Virus record (IMG/VR): IMGVR_UViG_3300036770_008729 | Location: 186,001 to 250,000 of that record | DNA: 64,000 nucleotides | Strand: one strand, 5' to 3' | Part shown: in pieces, positions 4,743-59,750 of the stretch | Layout: every line of letters begins with the position of its first letter | Position numbering within the stretch: the stretch's first letter is position 1 | The notes under the pieces: model-generated | The model's input: only the letters and a program-made list of their open reading frames with translations | Told to the model about the DNA's origin: nothing | Databases searched by the model: none | Program-made: the position numbers and the translations under genes

Positions 4743-7700
4743 ATGGCAATTCCAGCAGGTTTTCCACTTTACCCTAACGGTGTGTGGAATGTTTCTTTTA
4801 GTTTTCCTGGTGTTCCACCACTCGATAAATTAAGTGATATATCTAAATCCATAGATGGTAAATCACCATCTTTACTTTTAATTCCAAATGTAGAATTTAT
4901 TCAGAAGGTAATTGAAGGTGATATTGGAATTGGTGACTCCATTTTGAAATCAGCATTTACAAAAAATTTCACATCACCATTGACTACTGGAAACGAATTT
5001 GTTTTCAAAAAGTTAGCTGAATTGACAAAGATTGATGTATCGAATATAGAAAAATATACAAAACCACCACAAGCACCTGTCAATACAAGTGCGGCAACCG
5101 GAGCAGCAGGTGCAGCAACTGGAGCAGCAGGTGCGGCAACTGGAGCAGTCAATAATCTTAAATCAAAGTCAAAATTTATTTTACCAGCCAGTGAAGTTAA
5201 GGTGAGTAGTGAATTTGACTTGAATGGTATTAAAGGTTTCGAAAAAGCATTGCTAAAATCTATTTTTGAGACTCAAAAACCTTATATGGAAATAGCAAAA
5301 CTTGTAGTTGCTAATATCTCCAAGGCTGAAGATATAGTTGCGAGAATATTGCCTTTGGCTTTGCCTATCGGAACACCTCTGAACACAAAATCAGCAAAAC
5401 CAATAGGTAATGCGGGTGATGCAACAAGACCAAAGGCGTTAGGATTTGGAGGCGGAGTGGAAATAAAGAAAGCGATTGCAAAATTAGACGCATTAAATAA
5501 AAAAGGTGGTGAAACAATAGTTACTCCAGATGGAAAAGCTATCAGGCAAACCAATTCAGCTTTAGGAAATGCTCCACTTACGGCATCACAATCAGCTGAG
5601 CAAACTAACTTTTCAAATAACAACTCACCACAAAGTGACATTCCACCAGATGGATATTCCTATAGTGTTATTTCAGCAATTTACTCGACAGGAACATTTG
5701 ATCCTAATATAAATTACGAATATACTTATATAGATGTTCCAGCTGACGAGGATATTGGTGAAAATGACCAAGGTCTTAACCTTAATGATGATGGTGATCC
5801 TTATAAAGGTTTTAAGCCAGATTGTATTATATTGGGTATTTTCGATAGTAAAGGAAATCCTCTCAATCCACTTGCTCAACTTGATGGATATGATAATAAT
5901 GGTCAAAAAGTTCAAGCTAGAAATAGTCAAGGTGCTTTACTTACAAAAGCTGGTTGGATTTTGGATTCACCAAAGTGGAAGTTTCCTAGCGGTGTTTATC
6001 AATGGCCTAGATATGGCACACCAACCTACAGATATAAAGGAACTGGAACAAATTTAGGACAGGTTATAAGTTCTAAAGAAAAACCAGCACCAAATATTGT
6101 TCTAGACTCTATAGTTGGTGATTGGGAAATAATGAAATATGATACTATTTATCCAGACGCTATACCCATAAAGAAAAATTTACTGAATAATGAAGATGCT
6201 ATAAAAGGAGATCCCGTAATAGAAAATTTTGATCCACCGGAAGTAACAGAGTATCAAAATTTTTTTAACGATTTAATTGAGTTTAGATTGGCAACCACTG
6301 ATGGTATTACACCCGAAGATAAAGCCGAAGCAAGAGCATCAGTATACCCACAGATAAATGTTCCGGCTCATTTAGAAAATGTTTTTTTATATGGTCAATC
6401 AAAATCATCTATTTACACCCCAATAAATGTTCCTGATTTACCTGAAAAAGATAATCCATATCCAGATACTCTTAGATATTCAATGAAACCTTATAAAATA
6501 TATTCAGCGCCAGCAGCCGCAGATTCGAGATTGAGAGGTGTCTTTGGTTCAAGAATGGATGATAGAAACGGTAACGTCTGGGTGGATCCAGAGGCTGATT
6601 ATCAGGCAAAAATTATCAGAGTTGATCCTACTACAAAAATAAAATATACGAAACCAGGTCAGAGTGAACCAATAGTTGCGGAGATTCAAGCATTTGTTAA
6701 AAATAATTTAATACTTAAAATTTCAGATGATAGACAATTTAATATAGAAGTATATAAATCAACAGATTCATCGGTTACGAATCCTCAGTATAACTTATAC
6801 AAGCAATTAACCGGACTTACTGCCTATAATTTAGAGAATTGGAACTACAATGATAATGATGGGATTCTAAATGATAGAATAGGATTCTCTCAAAGTTCTG
6901 ATGGTGGTGTAGGGTTTGGAAATAATGCACCAGTAAAGAACGACAAGAATGGGTATAGAATAACAATGTGGGGTGAAAGAAATACACCATATTACGATAC
7001 GGTAAATGGATATTTAGCATATAAAGAAGATGCTAATAAGTATGTAGAAATAGAAAAACAACCTGATGGATCTTGGACTTTTCAGAAATTCAGTTTTGAT
7101 GTTGTTGCTGAAGGTGTAGCAATAGAGATATTAAGACCAACACTAGAATCTACTGGACCACAAATAGATTTTTTATATCAGAGTTATAAATCAAATCCTA
7201 ATTACGGATATCCGGTTAATGGATTGACTAAGACATCACAATATAATACCTTTACCTCAGATCCTGGTCCTTTTCCACTGAGTGGTTCAAATTCAGTAAC
7301 CCAGACCTATATTATTAAAGATTCTGTTACAGCAAGTAATACAATAACATTTGAGAACGACTTAAGAAATGAATTAAAATATGCAAATAGTATTATATTT
7401 AGAAGAATCATAGTAGATCAAGCTTACACTTATGCTTCGAAAGACATAGAGCTTACAGTTGATAATACAAAAGTAGATGCTATAGTATATAATCCAGCTA
7501 AAAATGAGACAGTAGTTAAGTTTACAACTATTTTCAAAAGTATTTCAGGTGTGAACCTAAGACCTATAGAAAAAAGACACTGGATTCACCAAATTAAATA
7601 TAATGTGTTAGTTGCAGATTTATTTAGTAGAAAAATAAGAATACCAGTATCTGGTTTATATAAACTAACCGAAGATAAATCAATAGTTGAAATTCAAAAT

Positions 7701-10487
7701 AACAGAATTGTGAAATGGTTTTACATGACTCCAATAATATTAGATGGAACAGTAAGTGGGTGGATACATTCAAATTGGTCTCCTGAAAATCCAACCACAC
7801 AAGACGGCACTATTGGATATGCAAATGGTGAAATAGAAAATGTAACACAGAATGGACAAGTTTATAATACACTCACACAACTAACAGTTACTAATACAGG
7901 TAATAACACTGGATATAATGGAAATACAACCCCTTTACCAAGAAACGGGAATAAAAGGACACTTACAGTAGAAATTGGAACTGGTAATGGTAATCCAGCA
8001 GGTCTGTGGAAGAATTCAACAACCTCTATACCTATTCAGAGGGCTCAGGATTCAGCATTCAATAGTTTTCAGATAAGAATAACAACACCAAATAATCCAA
8101 ATGGTGAGATTATTGATCCTGCTCAAGTCTTCAACGACCAATTGAAGACCTCTAAACCTTTTGTAAATGTTCCCGGTACAAAATATGGACATGGAAGTAG
8201 TGAATCACCACAATCAATAGGAATTATTGAAAGATTTATGTTAACCGAATTTGACACTGAATCATACTATATAATTGAGGGTATTTTACCAAGTATTGCG
8301 GATGAATTGTTGGGAGGATCAACACAAAGTTCTGGTGGTGCAGGCGGTGCTGGTGGTGCAGGCGGTGGCGGATTTTATAAACTCCCAGATGCAATTGGTG
8401 CAATTAAGGTTTTTATTAGTTTTTTAGTAGATATATTTTCTAAACTTATACCGAACATTAAAAAACTATTGAAGCTATTAAAAGACCCTTTAGGTTTTAT
8501 AACAGATATAGTAGCTGAAAAGCTAGGAGAAGCTTTTCCATTTCTATCACCAGAAGCATTTGATACATTCAAATCAGCTGCTAAACTATCAAAAAATGCA
8601 GCTGCCTCTGGTGGAACAGGTGCATCAGTTATTTCTGGATCTGCGAATTTAGGCCAACCACCAACAACACCAACTCCCGGTTCAGTAGCTGGACAAACAG
8701 GAAATCAAATAAATAATGCTACTAACAACGCTTCTGGTCAAGTCAATAGTCTAAATTCCTCATCAAGTAATTCCGTAAGTGGTGCTACCAACAGAGCTAA
8801 TGAAAAAAAATCTCAACTTATAAAAAAAGTTGAAAATCGTATAAAATCTTCTAAGTTAAACGGTGTTGTCTTTGTGGACAAACAACCAAAACTTCGTTCT
8901 GTTTTAGATGGTGTTGGAACAATTCCTTTTGAATTATTTGGTATAGATTTATCTTTTGGAATGGAGTTGAACATGAGTAAATTACCTGAAGGAACTCCAT
9001 TAAAATTAGTTTTTCCGAGTAATTTAACTTTATCTAAGTTATCATCAAACTCTGACACAGAAGCAAACAAAAATGCAGACAAAGATAATAATAACTCACT
9101 TTTAAGTGATAATCTAACGAAACCAAGAACAACAGTTGGTGAAGCTGGAACTCAAAATACTCTTCCCAACGGAACACCATTAAATTCTAATGATTACAAA
9201 ATACTTGATATAAAATACTCAACAGGTGAATTTGTTGCTGGTGTGGATTACAACTACATCTACATAACTAAGGATGTTGAAAATCTATTAGCTGAAGCAG
9301 ATGAGTTAGCAAAGAAAGAAACCGCTGAAGACTTAGGAAAGGCTCAAGAAAAACTTGAGGCTGCTAAAAAATTAGACCCACAAAATAAACTTATAGATGA
9401 GAAACTAAAAGATATAAAGAAAAAAAATGGATTCTTTAATTCTAAAACACAACCACTCCTTAAATTTTTACTGGGTTTCGTAACACTACCTTTAAAAATT
9501 GTCTCGAAGATAATTCAATTTATTATGGATTTCTTTAAGTCATTAACAAACCCAGTGAAACTACCAGCAGCTTTAGCTAAATTTTTATCATTTCAATGGA
9601 TATTAGAATATTTTATTCCACCTGGACCACCAATTCCAGGACTATTGAAATTGGTTGGAATAAATTTCGATCCTACAAAGTTAGTTCAATGGACTGCTTT
9701 GTCAAATATTCCAAATCCTAAGAAGCTTATTCAGAATTTAAATGATAAGGTTGGACAAGCGAATAATGCATTAACTAGCTTAACTGGAGCAGCAACTGGT
9801 GCAGTGACTGGTGCAGCTGGGTCGGCAACCGGAGCAGTGACTGGTGCCGCTGGGGCAGCAACCGGAGCGGCAACTGGTGCAGCTGGAGCGGCAACCGGGG
9901 CAGCAAATGAATTATCAAATCAACTTAAAGTAGAACCACCACCTATACCACCAATTGATTTTCCTTGGCCGATGCCAGTTCCTAAAGGAGACCACTTGAT
10001 ACCAGACGATTTTGAATTAGCTGACCTTAATCAATTCATAAGTGTTCCATTTATGGCTAAATTACCTACATACACTGCTAGACAAATAAGAACATCGCCT
10101 AAAAATCCATTAAAAATATTATGGCCACCCCTGTGTCTAATAGAGAAAATTATTAACTCAATAATAGATTTTTTCTGGTCACTATTAGGTATAGAAGCGA
10201 TAATACCACCACCACATATAAAGATATGTAAGGCGATGAAAGATGAAACTCTTACACCGGAAGATCTACAAAAAATTTTGAATGGAGAAGAACCAAAGGG
10301 AGTTAAAAATCCACCTGATAGTAATGACCTAAGTGGACAGCCATCTGATTCAAATGATAATGCAGGAAGTGCCTTTATTTATGAAGTTACATTACCAGAT
10401 GGTCGAAAAATACAAGCATTGAATGAGGAAGACCTACAAAAATTTTTAGATGAAAATAAAGATTTTCAATACGATTATCAATTCTAA
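4743..10487 (+). CDS. 1914-aa putative virion structural protein with Ala/Gly/Thr repeats
   Basis: Long ORF; GAATGAA repeats near both ends; Asn/Thr/Gly-rich beta-type middle. Confidence 0.7.
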   Translation: MAIPAGFPLYPNGVWNVSFSFPGVPPLDKLSDISKSIDGKSPSLLLIPNVEFIQKVIEGDIGIGDSILKSAFTKNFTSPLTTGNEFVFKKLAELTKIDVSNIEKYTKPPQAPVNTSAATGAAGAATGAAGAATGAVNNLKSKSKFILPASEVKVSSEFDLNGIKGFEKALLKSIFETQKPYMEIAKLVVANISKAEDIVARILPLALPIGTPLNTKSAKPIGNAGDATRPKALGFGGGVEIKKAIAKLDALNKKGGETIVTPDGKAIRQTNSALGNAPLTASQSAEQTNFSNNNSPQSDIPPDGYSYSVISAIYSTGTFDPNINYEYTYIDVPADEDIGENDQGLNLNDDGDPYKGFKPDCIILGIFDSKGNPLNPLAQLDGYDNNGQKVQARNSQGALLTKAGWILDSPKWKFPSGVYQWPRYGTPTYRYKGTGTNLGQVISSKEKPAPNIVLDSIVGDWEIMKYDTIYPDAIPIKKNLLNNEDAIKGDPVIENFDPPEVTEYQNFFNDLIEFRLATTDGITPEDKAEARASVYPQINVPAHLENVFLYGQSKSSIYTPINVPDLPEKDNPYPDTLRYSMKPYKIYSAPAAADSRLRGVFGSRMDDRNGNVWVDPEADYQAKIIRVDPTTKIKYTKPGQSEPIVAEIQAFVKNNLILKISDDRQFNIEVYKSTDSSVTNPQYNLYKQLTGLTAYNLENWNYNDNDGILNDRIGFSQSSDGGVGFGNNAPVKNDKNGYRITMWGERNTPYYDTVNGYLAYKEDANKYVEIEKQPDGSWTFQKFSFDVVAEGVAIEILRPTLESTGPQIDFLYQSYKSNPNYGYPVNGLTKTSQYNTFTSDPGPFPLSGSNSVTQTYIIKDSVTASNTITFENDLRNELKYANSIIFRRIIVDQAYTYASKDIELTVDNTKVDAIVYNPAKNETVVKFTTIFKSISGVNLRPIEKRHWIHQIKYNVLVADLFSRKIRIPVSGLYKLTEDKSIVEIQNNRIVKWFYMTPIILDGTVSGWIHSNWSPENPTTQDGTIGYANGEIENVTQNGQVYNTLTQLTVTNTGNNTGYNGNTTPLPRNGNKRTLTVEIGTGNGNPAGLWKNSTTSIPIQRAQDSAFNSFQIRITTPNNPNGEIIDPAQVFNDQLKTSKPFVNVPGTKYGHGSSESPQSIGIIERFMLTEFDTESYYIIEGILPSIADELLGGSTQSSGGAGGAGGAGGGGFYKLPDAIGAIKVFISFLVDIFSKLIPNIKKLLKLLKDPLGFITDIVAEKLGEAFPFLSPEAFDTFKSAAKLSKNAAASGGTGASVISGSANLGQPPTTPTPGSVAGQTGNQINNATNNASGQVNSLNSSSSNSVSGATNRANEKKSQLIKKVENRIKSSKLNGVVFVDKQPKLRSVLDGVGTIPFELFGIDLSFGMELNMSKLPEGTPLKLVFPSNLTLSKLSSNSDTEANKNADKDNNNSLLSDNLTKPRTTVGEAGTQNTLPNGTPLNSNDYKILDIKYSTGEFVAGVDYNYIYITKDVENLLAEADELAKKETAEDLGKAQEKLEAAKKLDPQNKLIDEKLKDIKKKNGFFNSKTQPLLKFLLGFVTLPLKIVSKIIQFIMDFFKSLTNPVKLPAALAKFLSFQWILEYFIPPGPPIPGLLKLVGINFDPTKLVQWTALSNIPNPKKLIQNLNDKVGQANNALTSLTGAATGAVTGAAGSATGAVTGAAGAATGAATGAAGAATGAANELSNQLKVEPPPIPPIDFPWPMPVPKGDHLIPDDFELADLNQFISVPFMAKLPTYTARQIRTSPKNPLKILWPPLCLIEKIINSIIDFFWSLLGIEAIIPPPHIKICKAMKDETLTPEDLQKILNGEEPKGVKNPPDSNDLSGQPSDSNDNAGSAFIYEVTLPDGRKIQALNEEDLQKFLDENKDFQYDYQF
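5089..5148 (+). repeat. Coding tandem repeat (AATGAAGAATGA)
   Basis: gcaaccggagcagcaggt-type units. Confidence 0.8.
9783..9905 (+). repeat. Coding tandem repeat (GAATGAVT/GAAG)
   Basis: Same unit type as 5089-5148. Confidence 0.8.
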
Positions 10488-26275: not shown

Positions 26276-26548
26276 ATGAATAAAGCAGATTTAGTAAATG
26301 AAATCGCTAAAGAAACCGGACTTACTAAAACTAAGTCAAGCGAAGTTGTTGATACAATTGTTGAAACAATCTCTAACTCCCTTAAAAAAGGTGAGAAAGT
26401 AACGCTTGTAGGTTTTGGAACTTTTACAACTTCTAAGAGAAGTGCTCGTAAAGGTCGTAATCCTAAAACCGGTGCAGAAATTAACATTCCTGGTAAAACA
26501 GTTGCTCGCTTCAAAGCTGGCTCTGAACTTACTAAGACAGTTAACTAA
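26276..26548 (+). CDS. hup: HU family DNA-binding protein
   Basis: MNKADLV...VTLVGFGTF...RKGRNPKTG...FKAG. Confidence 0.95.
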   Translation: MNKADLVNEIAKETGLTKTKSSEVVDTIVETISNSLKKGEKVTLVGFGTFTTSKRSARKGRNPKTGAEINIPGKTVARFKAGSELTKTVN

Positions 26549-26916: not shown

Positions 26917-27120
26917 CTATTTGTTATAATTGTCTAAAAAGTTCTTTTCGTGTTGTGATAAAGATTCAATACCACTTTGATTAATCTTTTCTAAAATCTT
27001 ATTTAACTTGTTTTCTCTGAATGATCTTCTGTCATTAAACTCATCATCAGTCAAAGGCCTCTGGTGTTTGACTTCAATTTCTTTCTTACCAAACCTTCTA
27101 AGCCAATCTAAAAATTTCAT
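26917..27120 (-). CDS. Small protein with DUF6576-like C-terminus
   Basis: [28 protein letters not shown]. Confidence 0.6.
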
Positions 27121-28037
27121 AACTCTTTGTTTTTCTTAGCAAACTCAGCAGCTGCCTCTCTTACCCAAGCACCATCCTCGTGAGCTTTTACTCTCATTTT
27201 AAGTCTATCTCTATTCATTGGACCATTTCCACTTACTACCTTATCAAATTCATCCCAATCTGGTTCAGTGAAATTCCAATTTCCAGTTGATTCATCAAAC
27301 TTTAAGTTTTCATCTGGTATAGTTAATCCTAAATAATCAGCCTGTGGTTTAGTTTGATTTACAAACTTTTGTCTTAACTGATCATTCGTTTCTCTTTTGA
27401 TTCTCCACTTAATCGCGTTCTCTGAATTATGAGACCTACTATCCGGTGGTCCAAACATCATTAAAGTTGGATACCACCATCTGTTTAAGGCATCTTGTGC
27501 CATTTCTTTTTGTTCAGATGACCCGAATGATAACTTGGTCATAATTTCATAACCCTGCCTTTGATGAAAACTTTCTTCTTTACATATCCTAACCATTGCT
27601 CTAGCATAAGGACCATAAGAAGCTCTCTGTAACATTACTTGATTCATTATAGCAGCACCATCAACTAACCAACCGATAGCTCCCATATCAGCCCAAGTCA
27701 AAGTAGGATAGTTAAATATAGAAGAATATTTTGCTTTTCCACAATGTAAAGCATCTAATAATTCCTCTCTTGAAACTCCTAATGTTTCTGCAGCTGTATA
27801 GAGGTAAAGACCGTGACCACCTTCGTCTTGAACTTTTGCTAAGAGTATTAGTTTGGCTCTAAGTGAAGGAGCTCTTGTAATCCAATTTGCTTCAGGTAAT
27901 TGACCAATAATTTCAGAGTGAGCGTGTTGAGAAATCTGACGAATAAGATGCTTTCTGTAATCCTCCGGCATCCAGTCTTTAGGTTCGATGTATTGATTTT
28001 GTTCTAATTTAGAATCAAATTTTGGTTGATGTTCCAT
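27117..28037 (-). CDS. paaA: 1,2-phenylacetyl-CoA epoxidase catalytic subunit A (di-iron, ferritin-like)
   Basis: [44 protein letters not shown]. Confidence 0.92.
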
Positions 28038-28227: not shown

Positions 28228-28908
28228 TTATTTACTTTTTCTAAAAGATTCGAAGTTTTTAACCCATTTTTTAGATTCTGTTGTAGACATTGATTTAACT
28301 ATACCTTCAAGCTCTAACAAAGTCTTTTTATAATCAGTGTGTAAGATTGCAGTTCCACCAGCCGATGTAAACTTCTCAACATATTTAGGTCTATCATCAA
28401 TTAATATGTCTGTTTTACCTTCAGCAGCTTTACCTTTATCAACTGTTATAATTACTTGGTCAACCATTCCTTCAAAATGTTCTTTTACCCAATCTTTCTT
28501 TTCAATAACAGATGGATTATTCAAATCATTTTCATCACCAACAGGCGCTGATAATATATTAGGTAATTTGCCAGTCAATTCCGCAGCCTTAGCAACCATT
28601 TCTTTTGCACCAGGCATTAGTGGTAAGTTTCTATAGAAACCAGGTTTTGCAGCTATACTAAAGACTTTAGAAGTATATTTATTGAAAGACTTTTTAAGCT
28701 CTTTAACTGGACTATTTGGATCTTTTTCTAATTCTGCCTTGAATTTAGTTTTGATATCATCATCAACTAATCCTTTGTAGTCTTGAAACTTGGTTTCAAT
28801 TAGATTGTCTAAATCGGCTCTTAGTTGTATTATCTCTGGATTTTTTTTAAGACCACCATCCATATCGGCTAAAACGCCATCTAAGTCAAAAAATATTCTT
28901 GTTTCCAT
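28228..28908 (-). CDS. HAD-family 5'(3')-nucleotidase (NT5C-like)
   Basis: FFDLDGVLAD and ILIDDRPKY motifs. Confidence 0.85.
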   Translation of the reverse strand: METRIFFDLDGVLADMDGGLKKNPEIIQLRADLDNLIETKFQDYKGLVDDDIKTKFKAELEKDPNSPVKELKKSFNKYTSKVFSIAAKPGFYRNLPLMPGAKEMVAKAAELTGKLPNILSAPVGDENDLNNPSVIEKKDWVKEHFEGMVDQVIITVDKGKAAEGKTDILIDDRPKYVEKFTSAGGTAILHTDYKKTLLELEGIVKSMSTTESKKWVKNFESFRKSK

Positions 28909-29408
28909 TATTTAAAATCTTCTTTTTTAATATCACCAATTGAGCCAAATGAATCAGCAAATCCAGGTGTTTTTTTATTCTCCACATTATTTGCAATAGT
29001 TATATGAAAATATCTTTCTGACTCAGGATTAGTTAAACCAAGTTGTTCATAGATTGAATCTACAAAAGATTTTATCTCTTCTTGATTTTGAACCGCAACT
29101 ACAAAACTTTTCTTTCCTTTTTCTGGTCTTTCCGCAAAGGTTGTTTGGCCTAATACAATTTTAGGCATTTCCATTTTTGGAAGTCCTTCTTTAAGTTTAT
29201 CTTTATTTTGTTTACAGTTAGCTATAGAAGTTAAGGTTATATGCAACTTATCTTCAGCTAAAGGAAAATAAGACTTAGCTTCTTCATTTCCCTCATAAAT
29301 ATTTTTAATTTCGGATTTAGTTGTGTTATCTAACTTTAGAAGAAGAGCCGCCTCAAAAACTATACAATTATCACCTGTAAAATCTTCATATAATTTTAAA
29401 TATTTCAT
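28908..29408 (-). CDS. 2H phosphoesterase with CTS-like N-terminus
   Basis: Two HxT motifs (LHITL, FHITI); MKYLKLYEDF. Confidence 0.75.
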   Translation of the reverse strand: MKYLKLYEDFTGDNCIVFEAALLLKLDNTTKSEIKNIYEGNEEAKSYFPLAEDKLHITLTSIANCKQNKDKLKEGLPKMEMPKIVLGQTTFAERPEKGKKSFVVAVQNQEEIKSFVDSIYEQLGLTNPESERYFHITIANNVENKKTPGFADSFGSIGDIKKEDFK

Positions 29409-29443: not shown

Positions 29444-30046
29444 CTACAATTTTATAAAATCTAATTCTTTAAGTGAAAACGTAATAAACATTATAGAAAA
29501 CAATATTCCAATCAAATTAAAAGAAACTAAATAAAAGACTAAAAGCAAAACACTAAATAAAAGAGAAATCCATGCACTTATTGTAATTGATTTTTGTCTA
29601 TCTCCTGTTTTTAATACTAAAATACTTCTCAATATACGACCACCATCTAAAGGAAAGATTGGAATTAAATTGAATATAAAAAGAAATAGATTGACTAAAT
29701 ACATGCTGTAAAAAAACTGACAAGGAAAAAATGCGTAGGCAAATAGTGATAGTGATATTAAGACTAAATTGACCCAAGGTCCAGCACCAACTATTAGTAT
29801 CATATCTCTTTCTCTGATAGAATCTATATTCATATTGGCTTGACCAGCGAATAATCCAACTTCTATACCAGTGACACTATATCCTTTTTTTTGAGCCACC
29901 CAAGCGTGACCAATTTCATGGAGTAGAATTGAAATAAAGATTGAGACTACAAAGACTGGTGATAGCCAAAAGAAAAGCAGTAAAAACCATAAGCTAAGAT
30001 TAACAGGAACACCCCTGAAGTTGAAAATTTTGATTTGTGTTTTCAT
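29444..30046 (-). CDS. Site-2 protease, M50 family
   Basis: HEIGH, GAGPWVN, FNLIPIFPLDGG. Confidence 0.9.
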   Translation of the reverse strand: MKTQIKIFNFRGVPVNLSLWFLLLFFWLSPVFVVSIFISILLHEIGHAWVAQKKGYSVTGIEVGLFAGQANMNIDSIRERDMILIVGAGPWVNLVLISLSLFAYAFFPCQFFYSMYLVNLFLFIFNLIPIFPLDGGRILRSILVLKTGDRQKSITISAWISLLFSVLLLVFYLVSFNLIGILFSIMFITFSLKELDFIKL

Positions 30047-30106
30047 TTAATATATTTTTTATAAAGATAAAAAAACCCTATGAATTATCAAAGGGTCTTT
30101 TTTTTA

Positions 30107-31576
30107 TTATTTTATTATTGATACTTTATCTATTGTTAAATCCCCAGTATGTTTACCGTTATCTTTGTAAATGGTAATGTTATATTCAGCAGACGCTGGA
30201 ACCTCATACTCAAAAGTAAACTCTGGTCTTCCATTTTTATTTAACTTCCTACAACATCCCTTCTCACAAGACTTACCAGACATTTTATGGTCTGCTCCAA
30301 AGAAGTTCATAAATCCAGCGAATGTGGAATTTGTAGGGTTACAAACACCATTCTCGTTTACATAAACCTCATAAACACCTTTTGGAACTTTTGTAAAACT
30401 AACAACAACTTCTAACTTTACCTTTTTGGTTGAAGTTAGGTTGATTTGAGTTAAGCCAAGAACTTTGATACCGGTGGTTATCTTACCACTTACTTTAGTT
30501 CCAGGTGTTGATTGTGCAAATAACTTCGGTTCTACCTCATCCATCAATCTAACTTCTTTTATTTTAACAGGAGTGTCATCAAAATCATAATCCATAGTGT
30601 AGATAATATCCAATGCCTCTTCTAAAGAATAAACTACTTTCTCACCATTCTCATTGAAGAAAACATAAGGCCACTCTACTTCTTCTAACTGTTCTATTGT
30701 AACAGGTTGACCATTATTAGAATTGTGCCATTGTTGCCAAATACGGTCTATATTAGAATGATGTGTCCAAAAGATAGGATCGAAAGCAGCAGTTGGAACC
30801 CAACCCATAAGTCCAGTATTTGTGGTAGTTCCAGTAATTGAATTATTAAACTGTAAAGTTCCTGTTGTATCATTACCAGCACCAATGTAATCATGCATTG
30901 CACCGTGAGGAGCATTATTTATGTTAAGACAAAACATTTTATAATCAGTATAACTCATTATTTTTGTTAAGTCTAAAGATCTACTAATTTCACCAGATAC
31001 CGGCCATCCATCATTCAAACTATCATATCTAGCTTCTTCAAAAAGTGAAGAGTGTTTATCTCTAAATAAATCTGGAATACATCTATCTCTATCATTATTA
31101 TTTGTATAAGCCCAATAAGGAAGTGCAAAATCATTATATCCTGATAATTTTCTAACTATTTTTTCAAAGTGCCAGATATAAAGACGGTGCCAAACTAAAA
31201 AGTGTAATTTTTCTTTACCTGATGGAGTGTGAGTACAATTATCCCAACCATCCATTTTATCACCTACATTGTGATAAGCACCACACCATCGATTGTTTTT
31301 AATTGTATCAGGAACCCAGTGAATGGCACCTTGATAATACCAACTCAGGGGATCTTTACAATCTTTTTTTCTCATAATATCTAAAGCTTTGTTTAAGGCT
31401 AAAAGGTCGTTAATGGCTTCAGGTGAATTTGCATTTTTTCTTGTAAATCTTTGTTGTTCTGTTTGTTTCTCGTTATTACTACAAGAAAAAAGAAACATAC
31501 TAAAAACGATTAAGAAAAAGATAATAAGACCAATAAATAACTTTTTAAGGTCTTTGTAAGTAGTGAATCGATTCAT
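30107..31576 (-). CDS. Tyrosinase / polyphenol oxidase (type-3 copper), predicted lipoprotein
   Basis: IHW, CTH, FLVWHR, PHGAMH, DPIFWTHHSNIDRIW; LFSC lipobox-like. Confidence 0.9.
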   Translation of the reverse strand: MNRFTTYKDLKKLFIGLIIFFLIVFSMFLFSCSNNEKQTEQQRFTRKNANSPEAINDLLALNKALDIMRKKDCKDPLSWYYQGAIHWVPDTIKNNRWCGAYHNVGDKMDGWDNCTHTPSGKEKLHFLVWHRLYIWHFEKIVRKLSGYNDFALPYWAYTNNNDRDRCIPDLFRDKHSSLFEEARYDSLNDGWPVSGEISRSLDLTKIMSYTDYKMFCLNINNAPHGAMHDYIGAGNDTTGTLQFNNSITGTTTNTGLMGWVPTAAFDPIFWTHHSNIDRIWQQWHNSNNGQPVTIEQLEEVEWPYVFFNENGEKVVYSLEEALDIIYTMDYDFDDTPVKIKEVRLMDEVEPKLFAQSTPGTKVSGKITTGIKVLGLTQINLTSTKKVKLEVVVSFTKVPKGVYEVYVNENGVCNPTNSTFAGFMNFFGADHKMSGKSCEKGCCRKLNKNGRPEFTFEYEVPASAEYNITIYKDNGKHTGDLTIDKVSIIK

Positions 31577-31664
31577 TAATTTATTTTTTATTTTTTATAT
31601 AAAAATAAAAACTTTTGTTTTCAAGATAGAAAATTGGCAAAATAGATTTAATATATAATGAACT

Positions 31665-33359
31665 ATGAAATGGATTAAAACTAGAAAACAATTTTTGATA
31701 GAAGCTATCGAGGATGAAATATTCCCTAGACAAGCTGAAGCGATTAAAAGGACTTGGGGTGAAAAATATTTAAAAATGACCAAGCCTCCTGTATCAAATG
31801 AACTTAAAAAATATGAAGGTAAATGGAAATTATCCGAAGAAGATAAATTAAAAATGCTAGGATCCTTCTTTCAATGTGATATGAAGGTCATTTTTGATAA
31901 TATTGCTAGTTTACCAGATAAGTTTTGTTATACGATTGCTCAATCAATTAGTATTCCACAAACTCCAGAGCCTGAAAAGTATGAAGTAGTTCTAAAAGAC
32001 TTCAATATGAAAGAACCTTCTATTGACCAAATTGTAGCAATTTTTGATAACATTTTCCGAAAATTAAATGTTAATGAAACAATTAGTGATTCTATGATTC
32101 AAAAAGATGAATCCGGAAGACCAATTAGAGATTCAGAAGGACAGATGGTAAAGGTTGCAAAAGAAAAAGGATCTCCTATTTTTACTAATAGTTGCACTAA
32201 CATTACTTCTTTCTGTGATGATTACAACAGATGTTATCCAGATGAAAAAGTAGATACAAATATTTTCACTGAAAATAATATAAAAAGTTTAAGAAACTTA
32301 GCAAAAGAAGATTGTAACGGTAAATTAAAAGTAGATTTTGAAATTTTTAACAAAGATCTTTACTTATCATTTTCTCACAATGAGAAGGACATATTAAATA
32401 TGTCTATATCAAAGTTCTACAATTCTTGTCAAAATCTTTATGATGGAGGATACAGAGAACAATTATTAGGTAATATATTTGATCCTAACTCAGCTCCAGC
32501 ATTTATGACATTTGATACTCCTATTTTCTGGGGAGATGAAAAGGTATCAGATCAATTACCTCTTTCAAGAACAGTAATAAGAAATATTGAGAATTTTGAT
32601 GGGTCTAGTCGAGGTATTTTCTTTGATAGAACTTATCCTGATAGATGTGAAAAAGTATTCAAAGAGTTATTAGTTAAGTATAGCAAAATGCAACAAACAA
32701 TAACAGATAGAGATTCTGTTACTTACTTATTTACACCAGACATCGATCCATCAGACACAGGAGTTAAAACTCCTTATATGGATAGATTAGGTGTTGATAG
32801 AAAACCAATGATTGGAGTAAATTGTAAAGCACTTTACTTATCAAGAGTAGGTGATTGGTCTGGTATAAAGATTTCACCAAATGCAAAGATTAAAGAATTA
32901 GTGGTTGAAACAACCGAAATTCCTCAGAACTTATTTGACCTTAAATTAAACTTAGATTGGATTAAATTTAAGTATTTACATTTGAAAGATTTAAAACCAT
33001 TTGGTGGTTTATTCACTGATTCAGTTGCTTTTGATAAATGTAAATTAAAGAATGAAGTTCTTCAAGAAAGAAAAGAAACTAAGAAGTTACAATTAATCAG
33101 TTGTGACATCGATGCGATTGATTTGTCTGGTTTCTCTAAATTAGAAGAGTTACACTTATTGTTAACTTTAAAAGATATAGATGAACTTAAAAGAACACTT
33201 ACAGGAACTAAACTAAAAAAGTTAGTTATCTCTGATGAAATATTAGGATTCTCTAAAAAAGATAGAAAAATGAGAATGTCTGAAGAAGCTTCTCAATTCA
33301 TCGAAGGATTAAAAAGAACTGGTGTGTCAGTAGAAATAAAAGGAATTTATAATAAATAA
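31665..33359 (+). CDS. Hypothetical protein with CTS-like N-terminus and LRR-like C-terminus
   Basis: MKWIKTRKQFLIE; LxxLxL repeats. Confidence 0.75.
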   Translation: MKWIKTRKQFLIEAIEDEIFPRQAEAIKRTWGEKYLKMTKPPVSNELKKYEGKWKLSEEDKLKMLGSFFQCDMKVIFDNIASLPDKFCYTIAQSISIPQTPEPEKYEVVLKDFNMKEPSIDQIVAIFDNIFRKLNVNETISDSMIQKDESGRPIRDSEGQMVKVAKEKGSPIFTNSCTNITSFCDDYNRCYPDEKVDTNIFTENNIKSLRNLAKEDCNGKLKVDFEIFNKDLYLSFSHNEKDILNMSISKFYNSCQNLYDGGYREQLLGNIFDPNSAPAFMTFDTPIFWGDEKVSDQLPLSRTVIRNIENFDGSSRGIFFDRTYPDRCEKVFKELLVKYSKMQQTITDRDSVTYLFTPDIDPSDTGVKTPYMDRLGVDRKPMIGVNCKALYLSRVGDWSGIKISPNAKIKELVVETTEIPQNLFDLKLNLDWIKFKYLHLKDLKPFGGLFTDSVAFDKCKLKNEVLQERKETKKLQLISCDIDAIDLSGFSKLEELHLLLTLKDIDELKRTLTGTKLKKLVISDEILGFSKKDRKMRMSEEASQFIEGLKRTGVSVEIKGIYNK

Positions 33360-33360
33360 T

Positions 33361-34995
33361 ATGAAATATCTAAAACTATTTGAAGCTTTCGAATCGACTA
33401 TATTAAGTAAAACTTTATCTTTCATCAAAGATGAAGAGTCTAAGAAACAATTCATGTTTGCACTAGACAAGATTTGTTCTACAATTGATTATCCTAAATC
33501 TGAGTTAAAAGATGAATACTTTCAATACTTATCATTTTACCCAGCACTTAAACTAAGTGCTAAAACAGGTGATGAACCTTGTGAAGCTTTATCACGTGAT
33601 TCTTATCCAGACTATGCAGTTGATGGGGCAAAGTGTAAAGGAGGTAAAGTATTAAGAAAGTGGGGAGCAAGAACAAGAGAAGTTGAATGTAGTATATGTA
33701 AAGGAACTGGTGTTAAACCAAAGAAACCTGAAATTAAGTTAGTTAAGTTTTGGTTTTCAACAGAAGGTAAATATATTGCTGTTACAGCAGTTGATGGCTT
33801 AATAAGAAACACAACGACTTCATCAACCGCGAGAGGGTATTCTAAAGACTATCAAGATTATATAGTAGTTAACACCACTGAAGATTCTAGAGAACTACAA
33901 ACTGGAATGATAGTTAGAGTTACTATTAATGGAAGACCTACTATTTGTTATATTGTTAAAGATAGAAATACTTATCCATATGCAATACAAGATGAACACA
34001 GTGGATCCACACCAGATAACATACCTTCTAGAAACTGGAGGAATTTTGGACATAGTTCTTGGCACTTATCAAGAGGTGAATACAGAGGAACAATTGAAAT
34101 ACTTGAACCAAAAAGTAAAGAAGAGGTTATTGTAGAACCAAATCCTTATACTTGGAATGCAACGCTTAGCTTATCTGGTTATTCAGGTATGAAAGTAGAT
34201 ATTTATTCTGATGTTCAAGAAAAAATTAAGGATGCAAACTTTGCTATTGTTTTAGATTTCGGTAAGATGAAACAATCAGAATTCAAAACTACTTATTCAA
34301 CGAGAAGTGAAAGAGAAGAATCTAGAACTGGTGCATTAGCATTAGAGAAACCTGAAGATATAAAAGCAACTAACATTGAAAGATATATTAAAAGTTTATC
34401 TGATAAAGTTGCAAGTGGAGATGAATTAACAAAAGTAACAAGAGTTATTCCAAGATTAATGGGTGGAAGAAATATTTTGCTTTATATTGGTATGAATAGA
34501 AATCTTTCAACTATTGATAGTTTAGCTACACGACTTTATAGATTTATTACAGAAGATGAGGACAATAAAGAATACAATGCAAGAGAAATAGTAGCAACAA
34601 TAAAAAACTCATACAAACAAAATCTACAATTTACTACTGATTTAAATGAAGTTTTAGATGAAGTAAGAAAACAATTACAAAAACCAGGAAAAGAAGCTTA
34701 TTTATCAACATTTGACAAAATGTTAGAGATATCACAAAAGATAAATGATAAAGTATTTTCAACAGAAGTTAAATCTATTGAAGATATTGAATACATCTAT
34801 CAAAAATTGAGGACAATTCAAAATATGTTACAATCCAGTCGTAATCCAGCAAATAGATTGAGATACTTTATGGAAAGATTAAGTTATCTAACTACTGATA
34901 GATGTGTATCTAGAATTTTAGAAATTGACCAAGATGAAATACCAAGTATAATTGAAGGTCTAGAATCAATTGGAAGATTTGTTGAGAGAGTTTAA
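33361..34995 (+). CDS. Hypothetical protein with CTS-like N-terminus and CxxCxGxG Zn motif
   Basis: MKYLKLFEAFES; CSICKGTG. Confidence 0.8.
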   Translation: MKYLKLFEAFESTILSKTLSFIKDEESKKQFMFALDKICSTIDYPKSELKDEYFQYLSFYPALKLSAKTGDEPCEALSRDSYPDYAVDGAKCKGGKVLRKWGARTREVECSICKGTGVKPKKPEIKLVKFWFSTEGKYIAVTAVDGLIRNTTTSSTARGYSKDYQDYIVVNTTEDSRELQTGMIVRVTINGRPTICYIVKDRNTYPYAIQDEHSGSTPDNIPSRNWRNFGHSSWHLSRGEYRGTIEILEPKSKEEVIVEPNPYTWNATLSLSGYSGMKVDIYSDVQEKIKDANFAIVLDFGKMKQSEFKTTYSTRSEREESRTGALALEKPEDIKATNIERYIKSLSDKVASGDELTKVTRVIPRLMGGRNILLYIGMNRNLSTIDSLATRLYRFITEDEDNKEYNAREIVATIKNSYKQNLQFTTDLNEVLDEVRKQLQKPGKEAYLSTFDKMLEISQKINDKVFSTEVKSIEDIEYIYQKLRTIQNMLQSSRNPANRLRYFMERLSYLTTDRCVSRILEIDQDEIPSIIEGLESIGRFVERV

Positions 34996-57697: not shown

Positions 57698-57810
57698 TAG
57701 TCAGGACAGGAATCGAACCTGCATGTGGGCCTTGTGTGTATTTCAACTATACTGCGGGTTTATCCACTCCGTTTAACTATTCGGTGCGTTTACCATTTCG
57801 CTACCTGACT
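57698..57810 (-). ncRNA. tRNA-scaffold RNA A (113 nt)
   Basis: AGTCAGG/CCTGACT acceptor, GCG/CGC D-stem, GCAGG-TTCGATT-CCTGT T-arm, no canonical anticodon arm. Confidence 0.75.
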
Positions 57811-58457: not shown

Positions 58458-58563
58458 TAGTCAGGACAGGACTCGAACCTATAATCTGAATAACCTATAT
58501 CATCTTGATTTATTACCAATGATATTTTGTATTCACGCTTTAACCCAATTTCGCCACCTGACT
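58458..58563 (-). ncRNA. tRNA-scaffold RNA B (106 nt)
   Basis: Same acceptor; ATAGG-TTCGAGT-CCTGT T-arm; elongated helix in place of anticodon arm. Confidence 0.75.
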
Positions 58564-59653: not shown

Positions 59654-59674
59654 ATATATTCAAAGAACTATTTG

Positions 59675-59750
59675 TCGTTAGGGTAGGACTCGAACCTACA
59701 ATCTTTCGGGATTTTCACCCGAACGCTCTATCAAATTGAGCCACCTAACT
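59675..59750 (-). tRNA. tRNA-Phe-like element with damaged anticodon arm (pseudo-tRNA E)
   Basis: AGTTAGG acceptor (A1-G72 mismatch), GCTC/GAGC D-stem, TTCGGG-TGAAAAT-CCCGAA, GTAGG-TTCGAGT-CCTAC. Confidence 0.6.

What the first reader, a model, noticed from the sequence alone, without database searches (positions are those of the whole stretch)
27117..28037. Lone paaA (phenylacetyl-CoA epoxidase catalytic subunit) in a phage context
Seen: full-length PaaA with both ExxH iron-ligand motifs, phage-like flanks, and no paaB/C/D/E neighbours in the window. Known: PaaA needs PaaC and PaaE for activity. Inference: an unusual auxiliary metabolic gene that plugs into or poisons the host complex, or a repurposed di-iron protein.
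Basis: partly seen in the sequence, partly recalled or inferred. Interest (0 to 1): 0.6.

Follow-up and report, generated by a model that had tools for sequence, protein, structure and literature searches.

The report
Lone paaA gene in a megaphage
A giant freshwater phage of Bacteroidota carries only the catalytic subunit (PaaA) of the bacterial enzyme that opens the ring of phenylacetyl-CoA, and it most likely works together with the host's remaining subunits during infection.

Summary
Window 27117-28037 (-) encodes a full-length PaaA of 306 aa (TIGR02156, 510 bits against a cut-off of 280). All six di-iron ligands and the lysine-bridge and substrate residues are present.

The context is phage. 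The window lies in a 281-kb IMG/VR record, itself the first half of a 598-kb contig. That record shares 151 of 378 ORFs, in the same order, with a 483-kb, 98%-complete phage genome that carries a terminase. In that relative the same site holds DUF5522 directly followed by HU, with no paaA, so paaA (with a DUF6576 gene) was inserted.

No PaaB, C, D, E or G was found in the 281 kb. The other 317 kb could not be read.

The gene belongs to a monophyletic clade of at least 119 metagenomic sequence clusters nested among Bacteroidota PaaA. The nearest cellular copy is 80% identical and sits in a canonical paaE/paaABCD cluster. Selection is strongly purifying (dN/dS about 0.05-0.07). 147 of 150 near-invariant cellular columns are kept.

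Best reading: a host-derived auxiliary metabolic gene that assembles with host PaaB/C/E, like the lone pmoC of large freshwater phages. I class it as a new member of a known kind, of moderate interest.

The parts
27117..28037 (-). paaA: catalytic di-iron subunit of phenylacetyl-CoA 1,2-epoxidase, 306 aa, full length
   Evidence: TIGR02156 510.6 bits (cut-off 280), PF05138 311.7 bits. All ligand residues present. dN/dS 0.05-0.07 within the phage clade.
28015..28224 (-). Small Cys-rich DUF5522 protein (69 aa, motif CCxxxCxHCPW). Its last 23 nt overlap the paaA start. It is a pre-existing phage gene at this site, not co-acquired with paaA.
   Evidence: PF17653 44.8 bits. Present at the same site in the paaA-less relative G015, directly followed by HU. 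Also found once or twice in each of 5 cellular Bacteroidota genomes, far from their paa clusters.
26917..27120 (-). Small DUF6576 protein (67 aa). Its start overlaps the paaA stop (ATGA). It is absent from the empty site in G015.
   Evidence: PF20216 45.5 bits. Follows paaA in L004, L005, L006 and L102 but not in L103 or L226.
26276..26548 (+). HU-like DNA-binding protein, convergent with the paaA block. It marks the downstream edge of the insertion site.
   Evidence: JGI gene call with PF00216 and PF18291. 72% identical homolog in G015, 35 nt from DUF5522.
28228..28908 (-). NT5C-like 5'-nucleotidase (226 aa), ending 3 nt upstream of the DUF5522 gene on the same strand
   Evidence: PF06941 46.1 bits. 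Same order in L003, L004 and L005.
28908..29408 (-). 166-aa protein with a weak 2',3'-cyclic phosphodiesterase (LigT-like) match
   Evidence: TIGR02258 E 1e-5, below the cut-off. Conserved in L004 and L005.
29444..30046 (-). M50-family metallopeptidase (200 aa)
   Evidence: PF02163 68.5 bits.
30107..31576 (-). Tyrosinase-domain copper oxidase (489 aa). It is the first gene of the seven-gene co-directional block that ends with DUF5522-paaA-DUF6576.
   Evidence: PF00264 93.7 bits. Gaps within the block are at most 60 nt.
31665..34995 (+). Two adjacent conserved megaphage ORFs (564 and 544 aa), divergent from the paaA block. They are synteny anchors found in all relatives.
   Evidence: Homologs in L004, L006 and L102, in 13 IMG/VR contigs, and in G007 and G015. 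No family match. AlphaFold model poor (pLDDT 64).

Best explanation
paaA here is a host-derived auxiliary metabolic gene of a roughly 0.6-Mb freshwater megaphage that infects Bacteroidota.

Shown:
- It encodes an intact catalytic alpha subunit of phenylacetyl-CoA 1,2-epoxidase.
- It sits in a phage backbone, between a DUF5522 gene and an HU gene. In a paaA-less relative these two genes are adjacent.
- It belongs to a large phage-only clade nested among Bacteroidota PaaA.
- It is under strong purifying selection.
- The 281 kb that could be read hold no PaaB, C, D or E.

Inferred:
- During infection the phage PaaA pairs with the host's PaaC (structural), PaaB (bridging) and PaaE (reductase).
- It thereby supplies or replaces the catalytic subunit, so that ring epoxidation of phenylacetyl-CoA continues or rises while host gene expression is taken over. 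Phenylacetyl-CoA arises from phenylalanine and other aromatics.
- This would feed acetyl-CoA and succinyl-CoA to a long replication cycle.

The logic is that of the lone pmoC and amoC of large freshwater phages and of cyanophage psbA.
For: Identity and intactness.

Phage context:
- IMG/VR record.
- 27 tRNAs with a tight array.
- ORFan-rich content with phage-type topoisomerase II, homing endonucleases and methylases.
- 151 of 378 ORFs are collinear with G015 (483 kb, CheckV 98%), which bears the clade's terminase.
- Empty site in G015.

Not a chimera:
- The same order NT5C-DUF5522-PaaA-DUF6576 occurs in a JGI contig and in two Logan contigs from other runs, and in related phages from other samples.
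- GC3 is 0.24 against a genome mean of 0.196 +/- 0.039.

Origin:
- The clade of 119 rows is monophyletic (support 100).
- It lies inside a set of 23 Bacteroidota plus the phage rows (SH-aLRT 98).
- The nearest cellular PaaA is 80% identical and sits in paaE/paaA-B-C-D...paaG clusters.

Function kept:
- dN/dS is 0.05-0.07 at dS 0.8-1.4.
- 147 of 150 near-invariant columns are kept.
- PaaA is 94% identical between the window and L004, while neighbouring genes are 70-87%.

Need for partners: only PaaA, B, C and E are required, and PaaA alone is insoluble because of its hydrophobic PaaC interface (PMC4498308).

Ability to bind a cellular PaaC:
- The model scores 0.93 against a best control of 0.00. 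That mark was reached by 51 of 78 solved complexes and 2 of 108 mismatched pairs.
- The runs agree in at least 98% of contacts, and partner pLDDT is at least 89.
- This shows likeness to the solved PaaAC complex, not binding.
- The 44 scored predicted interface positions are as conserved against the sister group as the rest (79.5% vs 81.3%). They vary less within the phage clade (entropy 0.097 vs 0.144 bits).

No phage PaaC seen: the 80 metagenome PaaC loci nearest to the sister lineage all lie in, or are contig-truncated pieces of, canonical clusters. Wherever the adjacent PaaA is present it is at most 84% identical to the window's.

Precedent: pmoC-phages carry pmoC but not pmoA or pmoB (PMC7674155).
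Against: - The host is not identified, so it is not shown that it has a paa cluster.
- 317 kb of the parent contig were not read, so a phage PaaC, B or E there is not excluded.
- Two of only three fixed differences from cellular PaaA, M46Q and G50A, fall in the predicted PaaC interface. One of them turns a hydrophobic residue polar. This could mean an altered or lost partner.
- The complex model may pass from memory of the solved PaaAC structures.
- Close relatives with near-complete genomes (G014-G016) do without paaA, so it is accessory.
Confidence: 0.55

Rival explanations
1. Repurposed or self-contained oxygenase. The phage PaaA works without PaaC/B/E. It would act as a homodimer or with phage-encoded partners, such as the clade-specific amine-oxidase-like flavoprotein or the Cys-rich DUF5522 protein. 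Its substrate would be phenylacetyl-CoA or another acyl-CoA.
For: - The fixed changes M46Q and G50A lie in the predicted PaaC interface next to lysine-bridge residue E49.
- A 387-aa flavoprotein sits directly upstream of (DUF5522-)PaaA in L006, L102, L103 and L226.
- A 386-aa NAD_binding_8 protein lies about 7 kb beyond the record's end in the same genome.
- DUF5522 overlaps the paaA start.
- BoxB, a homolog, needs no structural subunit (PMC4498308).
Against: - The neighbours are not constant. L103 and L226 lack DUF5522 and DUF6576. The window, L004 and L005 lack the adjacent flavoprotein.
- DUF5522 was at the site before paaA arrived. In cells it is unlinked to paa.
- The flavoprotein is a core gene of the wider megaphage group and occurs without paaA in a 635-kb genome.
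- It belongs to the amine and L-amino-acid oxidase superfamily, not to known oxygenase reductases.
- The substrate residues K103 and F108 and the predicted interface remain conserved.
Confidence: 0.15
2. Not truly lone. The unread 317 kb of the same phage genome encode PaaC, B and E (or more of the pathway), so the phage brings a complete epoxidase in scattered genes.
For: Only 281 of 598 kb were searched. Megaphages carry many host-like genes in scattered positions.
Against: - No paa gene other than paaA appears in any of seven phage contexts within +/-10 kb.
- None of the 80 nearest metagenome PaaC loci is phage-like or paired with a phage-clade PaaA.
- The part of G015 that corresponds to the unread half has no paa homolog, but G015 also lacks paaA.
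Confidence: 0.12
3. Dominant-negative subunit. The phage PaaA titrates host PaaC and PaaB into inactive complexes, shuts down phenylacetate catabolism and changes phenylacetate-linked regulation.
For: It is a lone subunit of a multi-subunit enzyme. It has interface substitutions. The PAA pathway is linked to stress and virulence regulation in some bacteria (PMC9493321, title and abstract only).
Against: All six metal ligands, the lysine bridge and the substrate-contact residues are invariant in 119 clade members. 147 of 150 near-invariant columns are kept at dN/dS about 0.06. A mere blocker would not need catalysis preserved.
Confidence: 0.06
4. Cellular gene. The 'provirus' is a misclassified stretch of a Bacteroidota chromosome, or the contig is a phage-host chimera.
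For: - IMG/VR labels the record a provirus cut from a longer contig.
- The 281 kb hold no terminase, HK97-type capsid or sheath match.
- The record carries host-like genes such as HSP70 and PrkA/SpoVR.
Against: - Collinearity of 151 ORFs with a 98%-complete, terminase-bearing phage genome.
- The same ORFan-rich content continues beyond the 'provirus' edge.
- The arrangement is reproduced in independent assemblies.
- No genome among the GTDB species representatives holds a PaaA above 80% identity.
- Cellular relatives always show paaABCD together.
Confidence: 0.03

Closest known systems
PaaA of the bacterial PaaABC(D)E phenylacetyl-CoA 1,2-epoxidase (E. coli and K. pneumoniae; PDB 3PW1, 4IIT)
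   Same: Same family by curated profile. About 65% identical over the full length. Same six iron ligands, lysine bridge and substrate residues. Modelled to bind a Bacteroidota PaaC through the expected surface.
   Different: Encoded in a phage without paaB/C/D/E/G nearby. It has clade-specific M46Q and G50A in the predicted PaaC interface. It is flanked by DUF5522 and DUF6576 genes instead of paaB.
pmoC-phages and amoC-phages: large freshwater phages that encode one subunit of a multi-subunit monooxygenase (PMC7674155; bioRxiv 10.64898/2026.06.18.733297)
   Same: Large or huge freshwater phages. A single host-derived subunit of an oxygenase complex, with the other subunits absent from the phage. 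The proposed role is to augment the host enzyme during infection.
   Different: A soluble di-iron CoA-thioester epoxidase of aromatic catabolism, not a membrane copper enzyme. Hosts are probably Bacteroidota rather than methanotrophs or ammonia oxidizers. The phage copy is only 80% identical to the nearest cellular copy, against more than 90% for pmoC.
Cyanophage psbA (photosystem II D1); comparison from general knowledge
   Same: The phage supplies the catalytic subunit of a host multi-subunit complex.
   Different: Different chemistry and host. Turnover of PaaA during infection is not known.
BoxB benzoyl-CoA epoxidase
   Same: Structural homolog of PaaA. It is a di-iron epoxidase of an aromatic CoA thioester and works without a PaaC-like structural subunit (PMC4498308).
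   Different: The window protein is a PaaA equivalog by profile score, not a BoxB.
PaaA listed among freshwater viral AMGs (PMC9554406)
   Same: A PaaA CDS on a viral contig from freshwater viromes is mentioned (one CDS).
   Different: That paper gives only a count. It has no genome context, phylogeny, partner analysis or clade description.

Membership tests
PaaA (TIGR02156; catalytic subunit of phenylacetyl-CoA 1,2-epoxidase) | Full-length match to the curated equivalog profile above its cut-off | tested here: met
   510.6 bits against a cut-off of 280, profile 1-289 of 289. The PaaC profile scores only 45.7 bits against a cut-off of 133.
PaaA (TIGR02156; catalytic subunit of phenylacetyl-CoA 1,2-epoxidase) | Di-iron ligands E42, E72, H75, D126, E155, H158 | tested here: met
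   All present at the same numbers and invariant in 119 clade members and 80 cellular sequences.
PaaA (TIGR02156; catalytic subunit of phenylacetyl-CoA 1,2-epoxidase) | Lysine bridge (K68, E49) and substrate residues K103, F108 | tested here: met
   Present and invariant.
PaaA (TIGR02156; catalytic subunit of phenylacetyl-CoA 1,2-epoxidase) | Encoded with paaB, paaC, (paaD) and paaE in one genome or cluster | tested here: not met
   None in the 281-kb record by tblastn or by profiles. 317 kb of the contig were not read.
PaaA (TIGR02156; catalytic subunit of phenylacetyl-CoA 1,2-epoxidase) | Forms the PaaA-PaaC heterodimer | tested here: inconclusive
   Model with the PaaC of the nearest cellular cluster scores 0.93 against a best control of 0.00. 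That mark was reached by 51 of 78 solved complexes and 2 of 108 mismatches. Contacts agree in at least 98%, and partner pLDDT is at least 89. The pass may come from memory of the solved PaaAC structure.
PaaA (TIGR02156; catalytic subunit of phenylacetyl-CoA 1,2-epoxidase) | Epoxidase activity on phenylacetyl-CoA | not testable with these tools
   Needs an enzyme assay.
Phage auxiliary metabolic gene (AMG) | Lies inside a phage genome with phage genes on both sides | tested here: met
   Collinear with G015 on both sides (G000 209-212 kb and 217-231 kb match G015 452-454 kb and 456-467 kb). Empty site in G015.
Phage auxiliary metabolic gene (AMG) | Derived from cellular homologs of the host group | tested here: met
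   The phage clade nests among Bacteroidota PaaA. The host itself is not identified.
Phage auxiliary metabolic gene (AMG) | Maintained by selection in the phage lineage | tested here: met
   dN/dS 0.05-0.07. At least 119 sequence clusters at 86-100% identity.
Phage auxiliary metabolic gene (AMG) | Expressed during infection | not tested

The most novel reading that the evidence does not exclude
The megaphage PaaA no longer depends on the host's PaaC/B/E. After capture its PaaC-facing surface was altered (M46Q, G50A). It would now act as a minimal, phage-autonomous aromatic-CoA epoxidase. It might draw electrons from a phage flavoprotein or a small Cys-rich protein, as part of a phage-encoded aromatic amino-acid catabolic set together with the tyrosinase, the amine-oxidase-like flavoprotein and the pterin-4a-carbinolamine dehydratase seen in this phage group.
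Probability: 0.12. Interest if true: 0.75.

Novelty: new member of a known kind. Interest (0 to 1): 0.45.

Why it matters
Phages that carry a single subunit of a host oxygenase (psbA, pmoC, amoC) are taken as evidence that viruses tune key steps of carbon and nitrogen turnover. Here the same pattern appears for aerobic aromatic-ring catabolism. It occurs in a diverse group of about 0.6-Mb freshwater megaphages (at least 119 sequence clusters) and in a second jumbo-phage lineage.

If the phage subunit does assemble with host PaaB/C/E, viral infection could alter the degradation of phenylalanine- and lignin-derived aromatics in lakes and groundwater.

The case also gives a clean test bed. There is a known insertion site with an empty-site relative, a solved partner complex, and only three fixed substitutions to test.

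Tried and rejected
- DUF5522 as a dedicated PaaA partner: weakened. It predates paaA at the site. It is missing next to paaA in L103 and L226. In cells it lies away from paa genes, next to urocanase in 2 of 6 places.
- Flavoprotein as a co-acquired reductase: weakened. It is a core gene of the wider phage group and occurs without paaA. It is of the amine-oxidase type.
- Reading the rest of the parent contig: the genome search does not hold it. Walking by look-ups reached only about 10 kb beyond the edge.
- Linking the parent contig to a terminase by the 'longest contig' column: not found among the best 120.
- Hallmark genes in the 281 kb: Terminase_6N, Phage_capsid and Phage_sheath_1 gave no match. 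They match only in relatives.
- megablast of 25 kb against GenBank phages: no match.
- PHROGs for PaaA: no family.
- Sigma-70 promoter and terminator scan: at chance level.
- Fold of the conserved 564-aa neighbour: pLDDT 64, so it was not searched.
- The original structure paper PMC3060524 is not held.
- One origin for both phage PaaA groups: the ML tree separates them, and holding them together costs 50.7 log-likelihood units. The AU test gives p = 0.059, so a single origin is not formally rejected.
- P0014 (429 aa) is a cellular-type PaaA with an internal duplication, not a fusion of interest.

Full report
**1. The observation**

Window 27117-28037 on the minus strand is an ATG-started ORF of 306 aa.
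- It matches Pfam PaaA_PaaC end to end (311.7 bits).
- It matches the NCBIfam equivalog for PaaA at 510.6 bits against a cut-off of 280. The PaaC model scores only 45.7 bits.
- It aligns over residues 4-303 with the solved K. pneumoniae and E. coli PaaA chains.

The review PMC4498308 lists the functional residues of E. coli PaaA: iron ligands Glu42, Glu72, His75, Asp126, Glu155 and His158; lysine bridge Lys68, Glu49, Glu72 and Asp126; substrate residues Lys103 and Phe108. The window protein has every one of them at the same number. They are invariant in 119 related metagenomic sequences.

**2. Is it alone?**

The window is positions 186001-250000 of an IMG/VR record of 281,114 bp.
- The PaaA_PaaC profile, which also detects PaaC, finds one place only in that record.
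- tblastn with PaaB, C, D, E and G from the nearest cellular cluster (L010, identified) finds nothing better than E 0.07.
- The profiles for PaaB (PF06243), PaaE (TIGR02160) and PaaD (TIGR02159) find nothing at E <= 0.01.

The limit is that the record is only positions 2-281,115 of a JGI contig of 598,435 bp. That contig is not held for searching, so 317 kb remain unread.

**3. Is the context a phage?**

IMG/VR labels the record 'provirus'.

Gene content:
- Most large ORFs have no Pfam or PHROG family.
- The ORFs that do match include T4-type topoisomerase II, homing and HNH endonucleases, DNA methylases, dihydrofolate reductase, tRNA nucleotidyltransferase, a ClpB-like ATPase, HSP70 and PrkA/DUF444/SpoVR.
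- Proteins with SprB repeats and type-IX secretion sorting domains point to Bacteroidota hosts.
- The record has 27 tRNA genes, 22 of them in one tight array.
- The 281 kb hold no terminase, HK97-type capsid or sheath match.

The decisive evidence is comparative.
- The conserved 564-aa neighbour of the paaA block has homologs on 13 IMG/VR contigs.
- Of the four largest of these that were searched, three carry a 715-737-aa terminase and all four a roughly 1370-aa sheath-like protein.
- That terminase family is found on 251 IMG/VR contigs and on metagenome contigs of 611-649 kb.
- One member, G015, is 483,262 bp with a CheckV completeness of 98%.
- 151 of the 378 ORFs of the window's record have homologs in G015, in the same order. 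G000 1-231 kb corresponds to G015 284-467 kb.

The record is therefore the non-structural half of a megaphage genome. A Logan contig that spans the 'provirus' edge shows the same ORFan-rich content continuing beyond it. The edge looks arbitrary, and the 598-kb contig is probably one phage genome.

**4. Insertion site**

In G015 the order is a 377-aa ORF, DUF5522 (61 aa; PF17653), a 35-nt gap, then a convergent HU gene. There is no paaA and no DUF6576.

In the window the order is tyrosinase, M50 peptidase, a LigT-like protein, NT5C, DUF5522, paaA, DUF6576, then the convergent HU gene. Gaps are at most 60 nt. DUF5522 overlaps paaA by 23 nt, and paaA overlaps DUF6576 in an ATGA.

So paaA, with DUF6576, entered a pre-existing phage locus downstream of DUF5522.

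**5. Not an assembly artefact**
- The order NT5C-DUF5522-PaaA-DUF6576 recurs at 98-100% identity in the JGI contig and in two Logan contigs from other runs.
- It recurs at 70-95% identity in related phages from two further samples.
- paaA has the third-position GC of the phage (0.24 against 0.196 +/- 0.039).

**6. Relatives and origin**
- The word search returned its maximum of 8000 hits. Apart from one aberrant 429-aa sequence (P0014), the best 120 are all 86-100% identical and come from JGI, ENA and Logan metagenomes.
- All seven contexts that were read are phage-like and hold no other paa gene: L002, L004, L005, L006, L102, L103 and L226.
- Among one genome per GTDB species, the nearest PaaA is 80% identical. 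It lies in uncultured Bacteroidota MAGs from lakes and groundwater, where it sits in a canonical paaE / paaA-paaB-paaC-(x)-paaD ... paaG cluster.
- In trees the phage sequences form one clade (support 100) inside a set made of 23 Bacteroidota, the phage rows and one unclassified row (SH-aLRT 98).
- The 80 metagenome PaaC loci nearest to that sister lineage all lie in, or are truncated pieces of, canonical clusters. Where an adjacent PaaA is present it is at most 84% identical to the window's. No phage-borne PaaC turned up.

**7. A second phage lineage**

Three IMG/VR contigs of 43-46% GC each carry one PaaA, 64-66% identical to the window's, among short same-strand ORFs. CheckV puts them at 13-30% complete for 44-104 kb, which implies a genome of about 345 kb. 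They have no PaaB, C, D or E.

They form their own clade. Forcing one origin for both phage groups costs 50.7 log-likelihood units. The AU test gives p = 0.059, so independent capture is favoured but not formally shown.

**8. Is the gene functional?**
- Within the phage clade dN/dS is 0.05-0.07 at dS 0.8-1.4, similar to a cellular pair at 0.06.
- PaaA is the best-conserved gene of its neighbourhood: 94% identity between the window and L004, against 70-87% for the neighbours.
- Of 150 alignment columns at least 95% conserved in 80 cellular PaaA sequences, 147 are kept.
- Only three positions differ in a fixed way: M46Q, G50A and N248D.

**9. Partners**

Established knowledge (PMC4498308):
- PaaA, B, C and E are all needed for epoxidation.
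- PaaA-PaaC is a tight heterodimer.
- PaaA alone is insoluble because its PaaC-facing surface is hydrophobic.

I modelled the window PaaA with the PaaC of the nearest cellular cluster.
- The score was 0.93 against a best control of 0.00. That mark was reached by 51 of 78 solved complexes and 2 of 108 mismatched pairs.
- The runs agreed in at least 98% of contacts, and partner pLDDT was at least 89.
- PaaAC structures are solved, so this shows likeness rather than binding.

The modelled interface lets one ask how selection treats that surface.
- Over the 44 scored interface positions, the phage consensus equals the sister consensus at 79.5%, against 81.3% elsewhere (not different).
- Those positions vary less within the phage clade (0.097 against 0.144 bits).

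The surface is still constrained, as expected if a PaaC-like partner is still used. Two of the three fixed changes (46 and 50) lie in that surface, next to Glu49 of the lysine bridge. This is the one hint of an altered partnership.

**10. The neighbours as partners**
- DUF5522 (motif CCxxxCxHCPW) predates paaA at the site. It is absent next to paaA in L103 and L226. It occurs in all five cellular Bacteroidota genomes examined, away from their paa clusters.
- A 387-aa flavoprotein lies directly upstream of (DUF5522-)paaA in four contexts. It belongs to the amine and L-amino-acid oxidase superfamily. It has only 290 relatives at E <= 1e-20, all apparently from this phage group, and it occurs without paaA in a 635-kb genome.
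- An L-amino-acid oxidase acting on phenylalanine could feed the phenylacetate route. Together with the tyrosinase in the window and a pterin-4a-carbinolamine dehydratase in relatives, this suggests an aromatic amino-acid theme. That is inference only.

**11. Verdict**

The gene is a genuine, intact, selected paaA captured from Bacteroidota by a sub-lineage of about 0.6-Mb freshwater megaphages. As far as could be read, it stands without the other epoxidase subunits.

The best-supported mechanism is assembly with host PaaC/B/E to keep or raise phenylacetyl-CoA ring epoxidation during infection (confidence 0.55).

The closest precedent is the lone pmoC of large freshwater phages, whose complete genomes lack pmoA and pmoB (PMC7674155). 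PaaA had only been counted once among freshwater viral genes (PMC9554406).

I class it as a new member of a known kind (a single-subunit oxygenase AMG), of moderate interest.

Noticed in passing
whole record G000 (window = 186001-250000); parent contig Ga0310126_0000009: The IMG/VR 'provirus' is positions 2-281,115 of a 598,435-bp contig. Content beyond the edge is the same ORFan-rich kind. The record is collinear with the right half of a 483-kb complete relative. The whole contig is probably one megaphage genome and the provirus call an artefact. CheckV's 94% for this record disagrees with the 17-33% given to 100-191-kb relatives.
   Followed up: partly
window 59674-59750 (-), 57698-57810 (-), 58458-58563 (-): A tRNA-Phe with the unusual anticodon AAA; the genome also has tRNA-Phe GAA. 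Two further Rfam tRNA matches of 113 and 106 nt carry a 35-40-nt insert and were not called by ARAGORN. They may be intron-containing or otherwise odd phage tRNAs.
   Followed up: no
G000 258,020-264,410 (outside the window): Tight array of 22 tRNA genes with spacers of a few bases. The 483-kb relative G015 has only 3 tRNAs.
   Followed up: no
window 30107-31576 (-): A 489-aa tyrosinase-domain copper oxidase heads the co-directional block that ends with paaA. It is a second aromatic-oxidising metalloenzyme in the same phage operon-like unit, conserved at 75% in L004 and L005.
   Followed up: partly
L087-L089 (IMG/VR contigs of 44, 104 and 49 kb; GC 43-46%): A second jumbo-phage lineage (CheckV implies about 345 kb) with a lone PaaA 64-66% identical to the window's. 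Its neighbours are a D-Ala-D-Ala carboxypeptidase, an FMN-dependent alpha-hydroxyacid dehydrogenase, a radical SAM protein and an HhH-GPD glycosylase.
   Followed up: partly
L006 8647-9810, L102 8643-9803, L103 8829-9992, L226 8829-9992; also about 7 kb beyond the end of G000: A 384-388-aa amine-oxidase / L-amino-acid-oxidase-like flavoprotein restricted to this megaphage group (290 relatives at E <= 1e-20). It lies directly upstream of paaA in four relatives.
   Followed up: partly
window 4743-10487 (+): A 1914-aa ORF with no Pfam or PHROG match. It has a 36%-identical homolog in G015.
   Followed up: no
window 30053-30076 and 31589-31612: An AT-rich 24-nt motif (83% identical copies) occurs in the two intergenic regions just upstream of the M50 and tyrosinase genes. 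It is a candidate phage promoter element.
   Followed up: no
G000 outside the window: The megaphage encodes HSP70, the PrkA/DUF444/SpoVR trio, two FMN reductases, fucosyltransferases and SprB-repeat and Por_Secre_tail proteins. This is an unusually cell-like accessory set.
   Followed up: no
G000 1-100: The contig starts inside a tandem, proline-rich coding repeat (repeated CCAGATGTTCC units). This probably explains why the assembly stopped there.
   Followed up: no
L108 1498-1857 (cellular Bacteroidota genome G001): One cellular DUF5522 copy is fused to an N-terminal Cys-rich domain. The G015 copy also gives a weak match to the 'Oxidoreductase-like N-terminal' family (PF09791). This hints that DUF5522 is a metal-binding module.
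   Followed up: no
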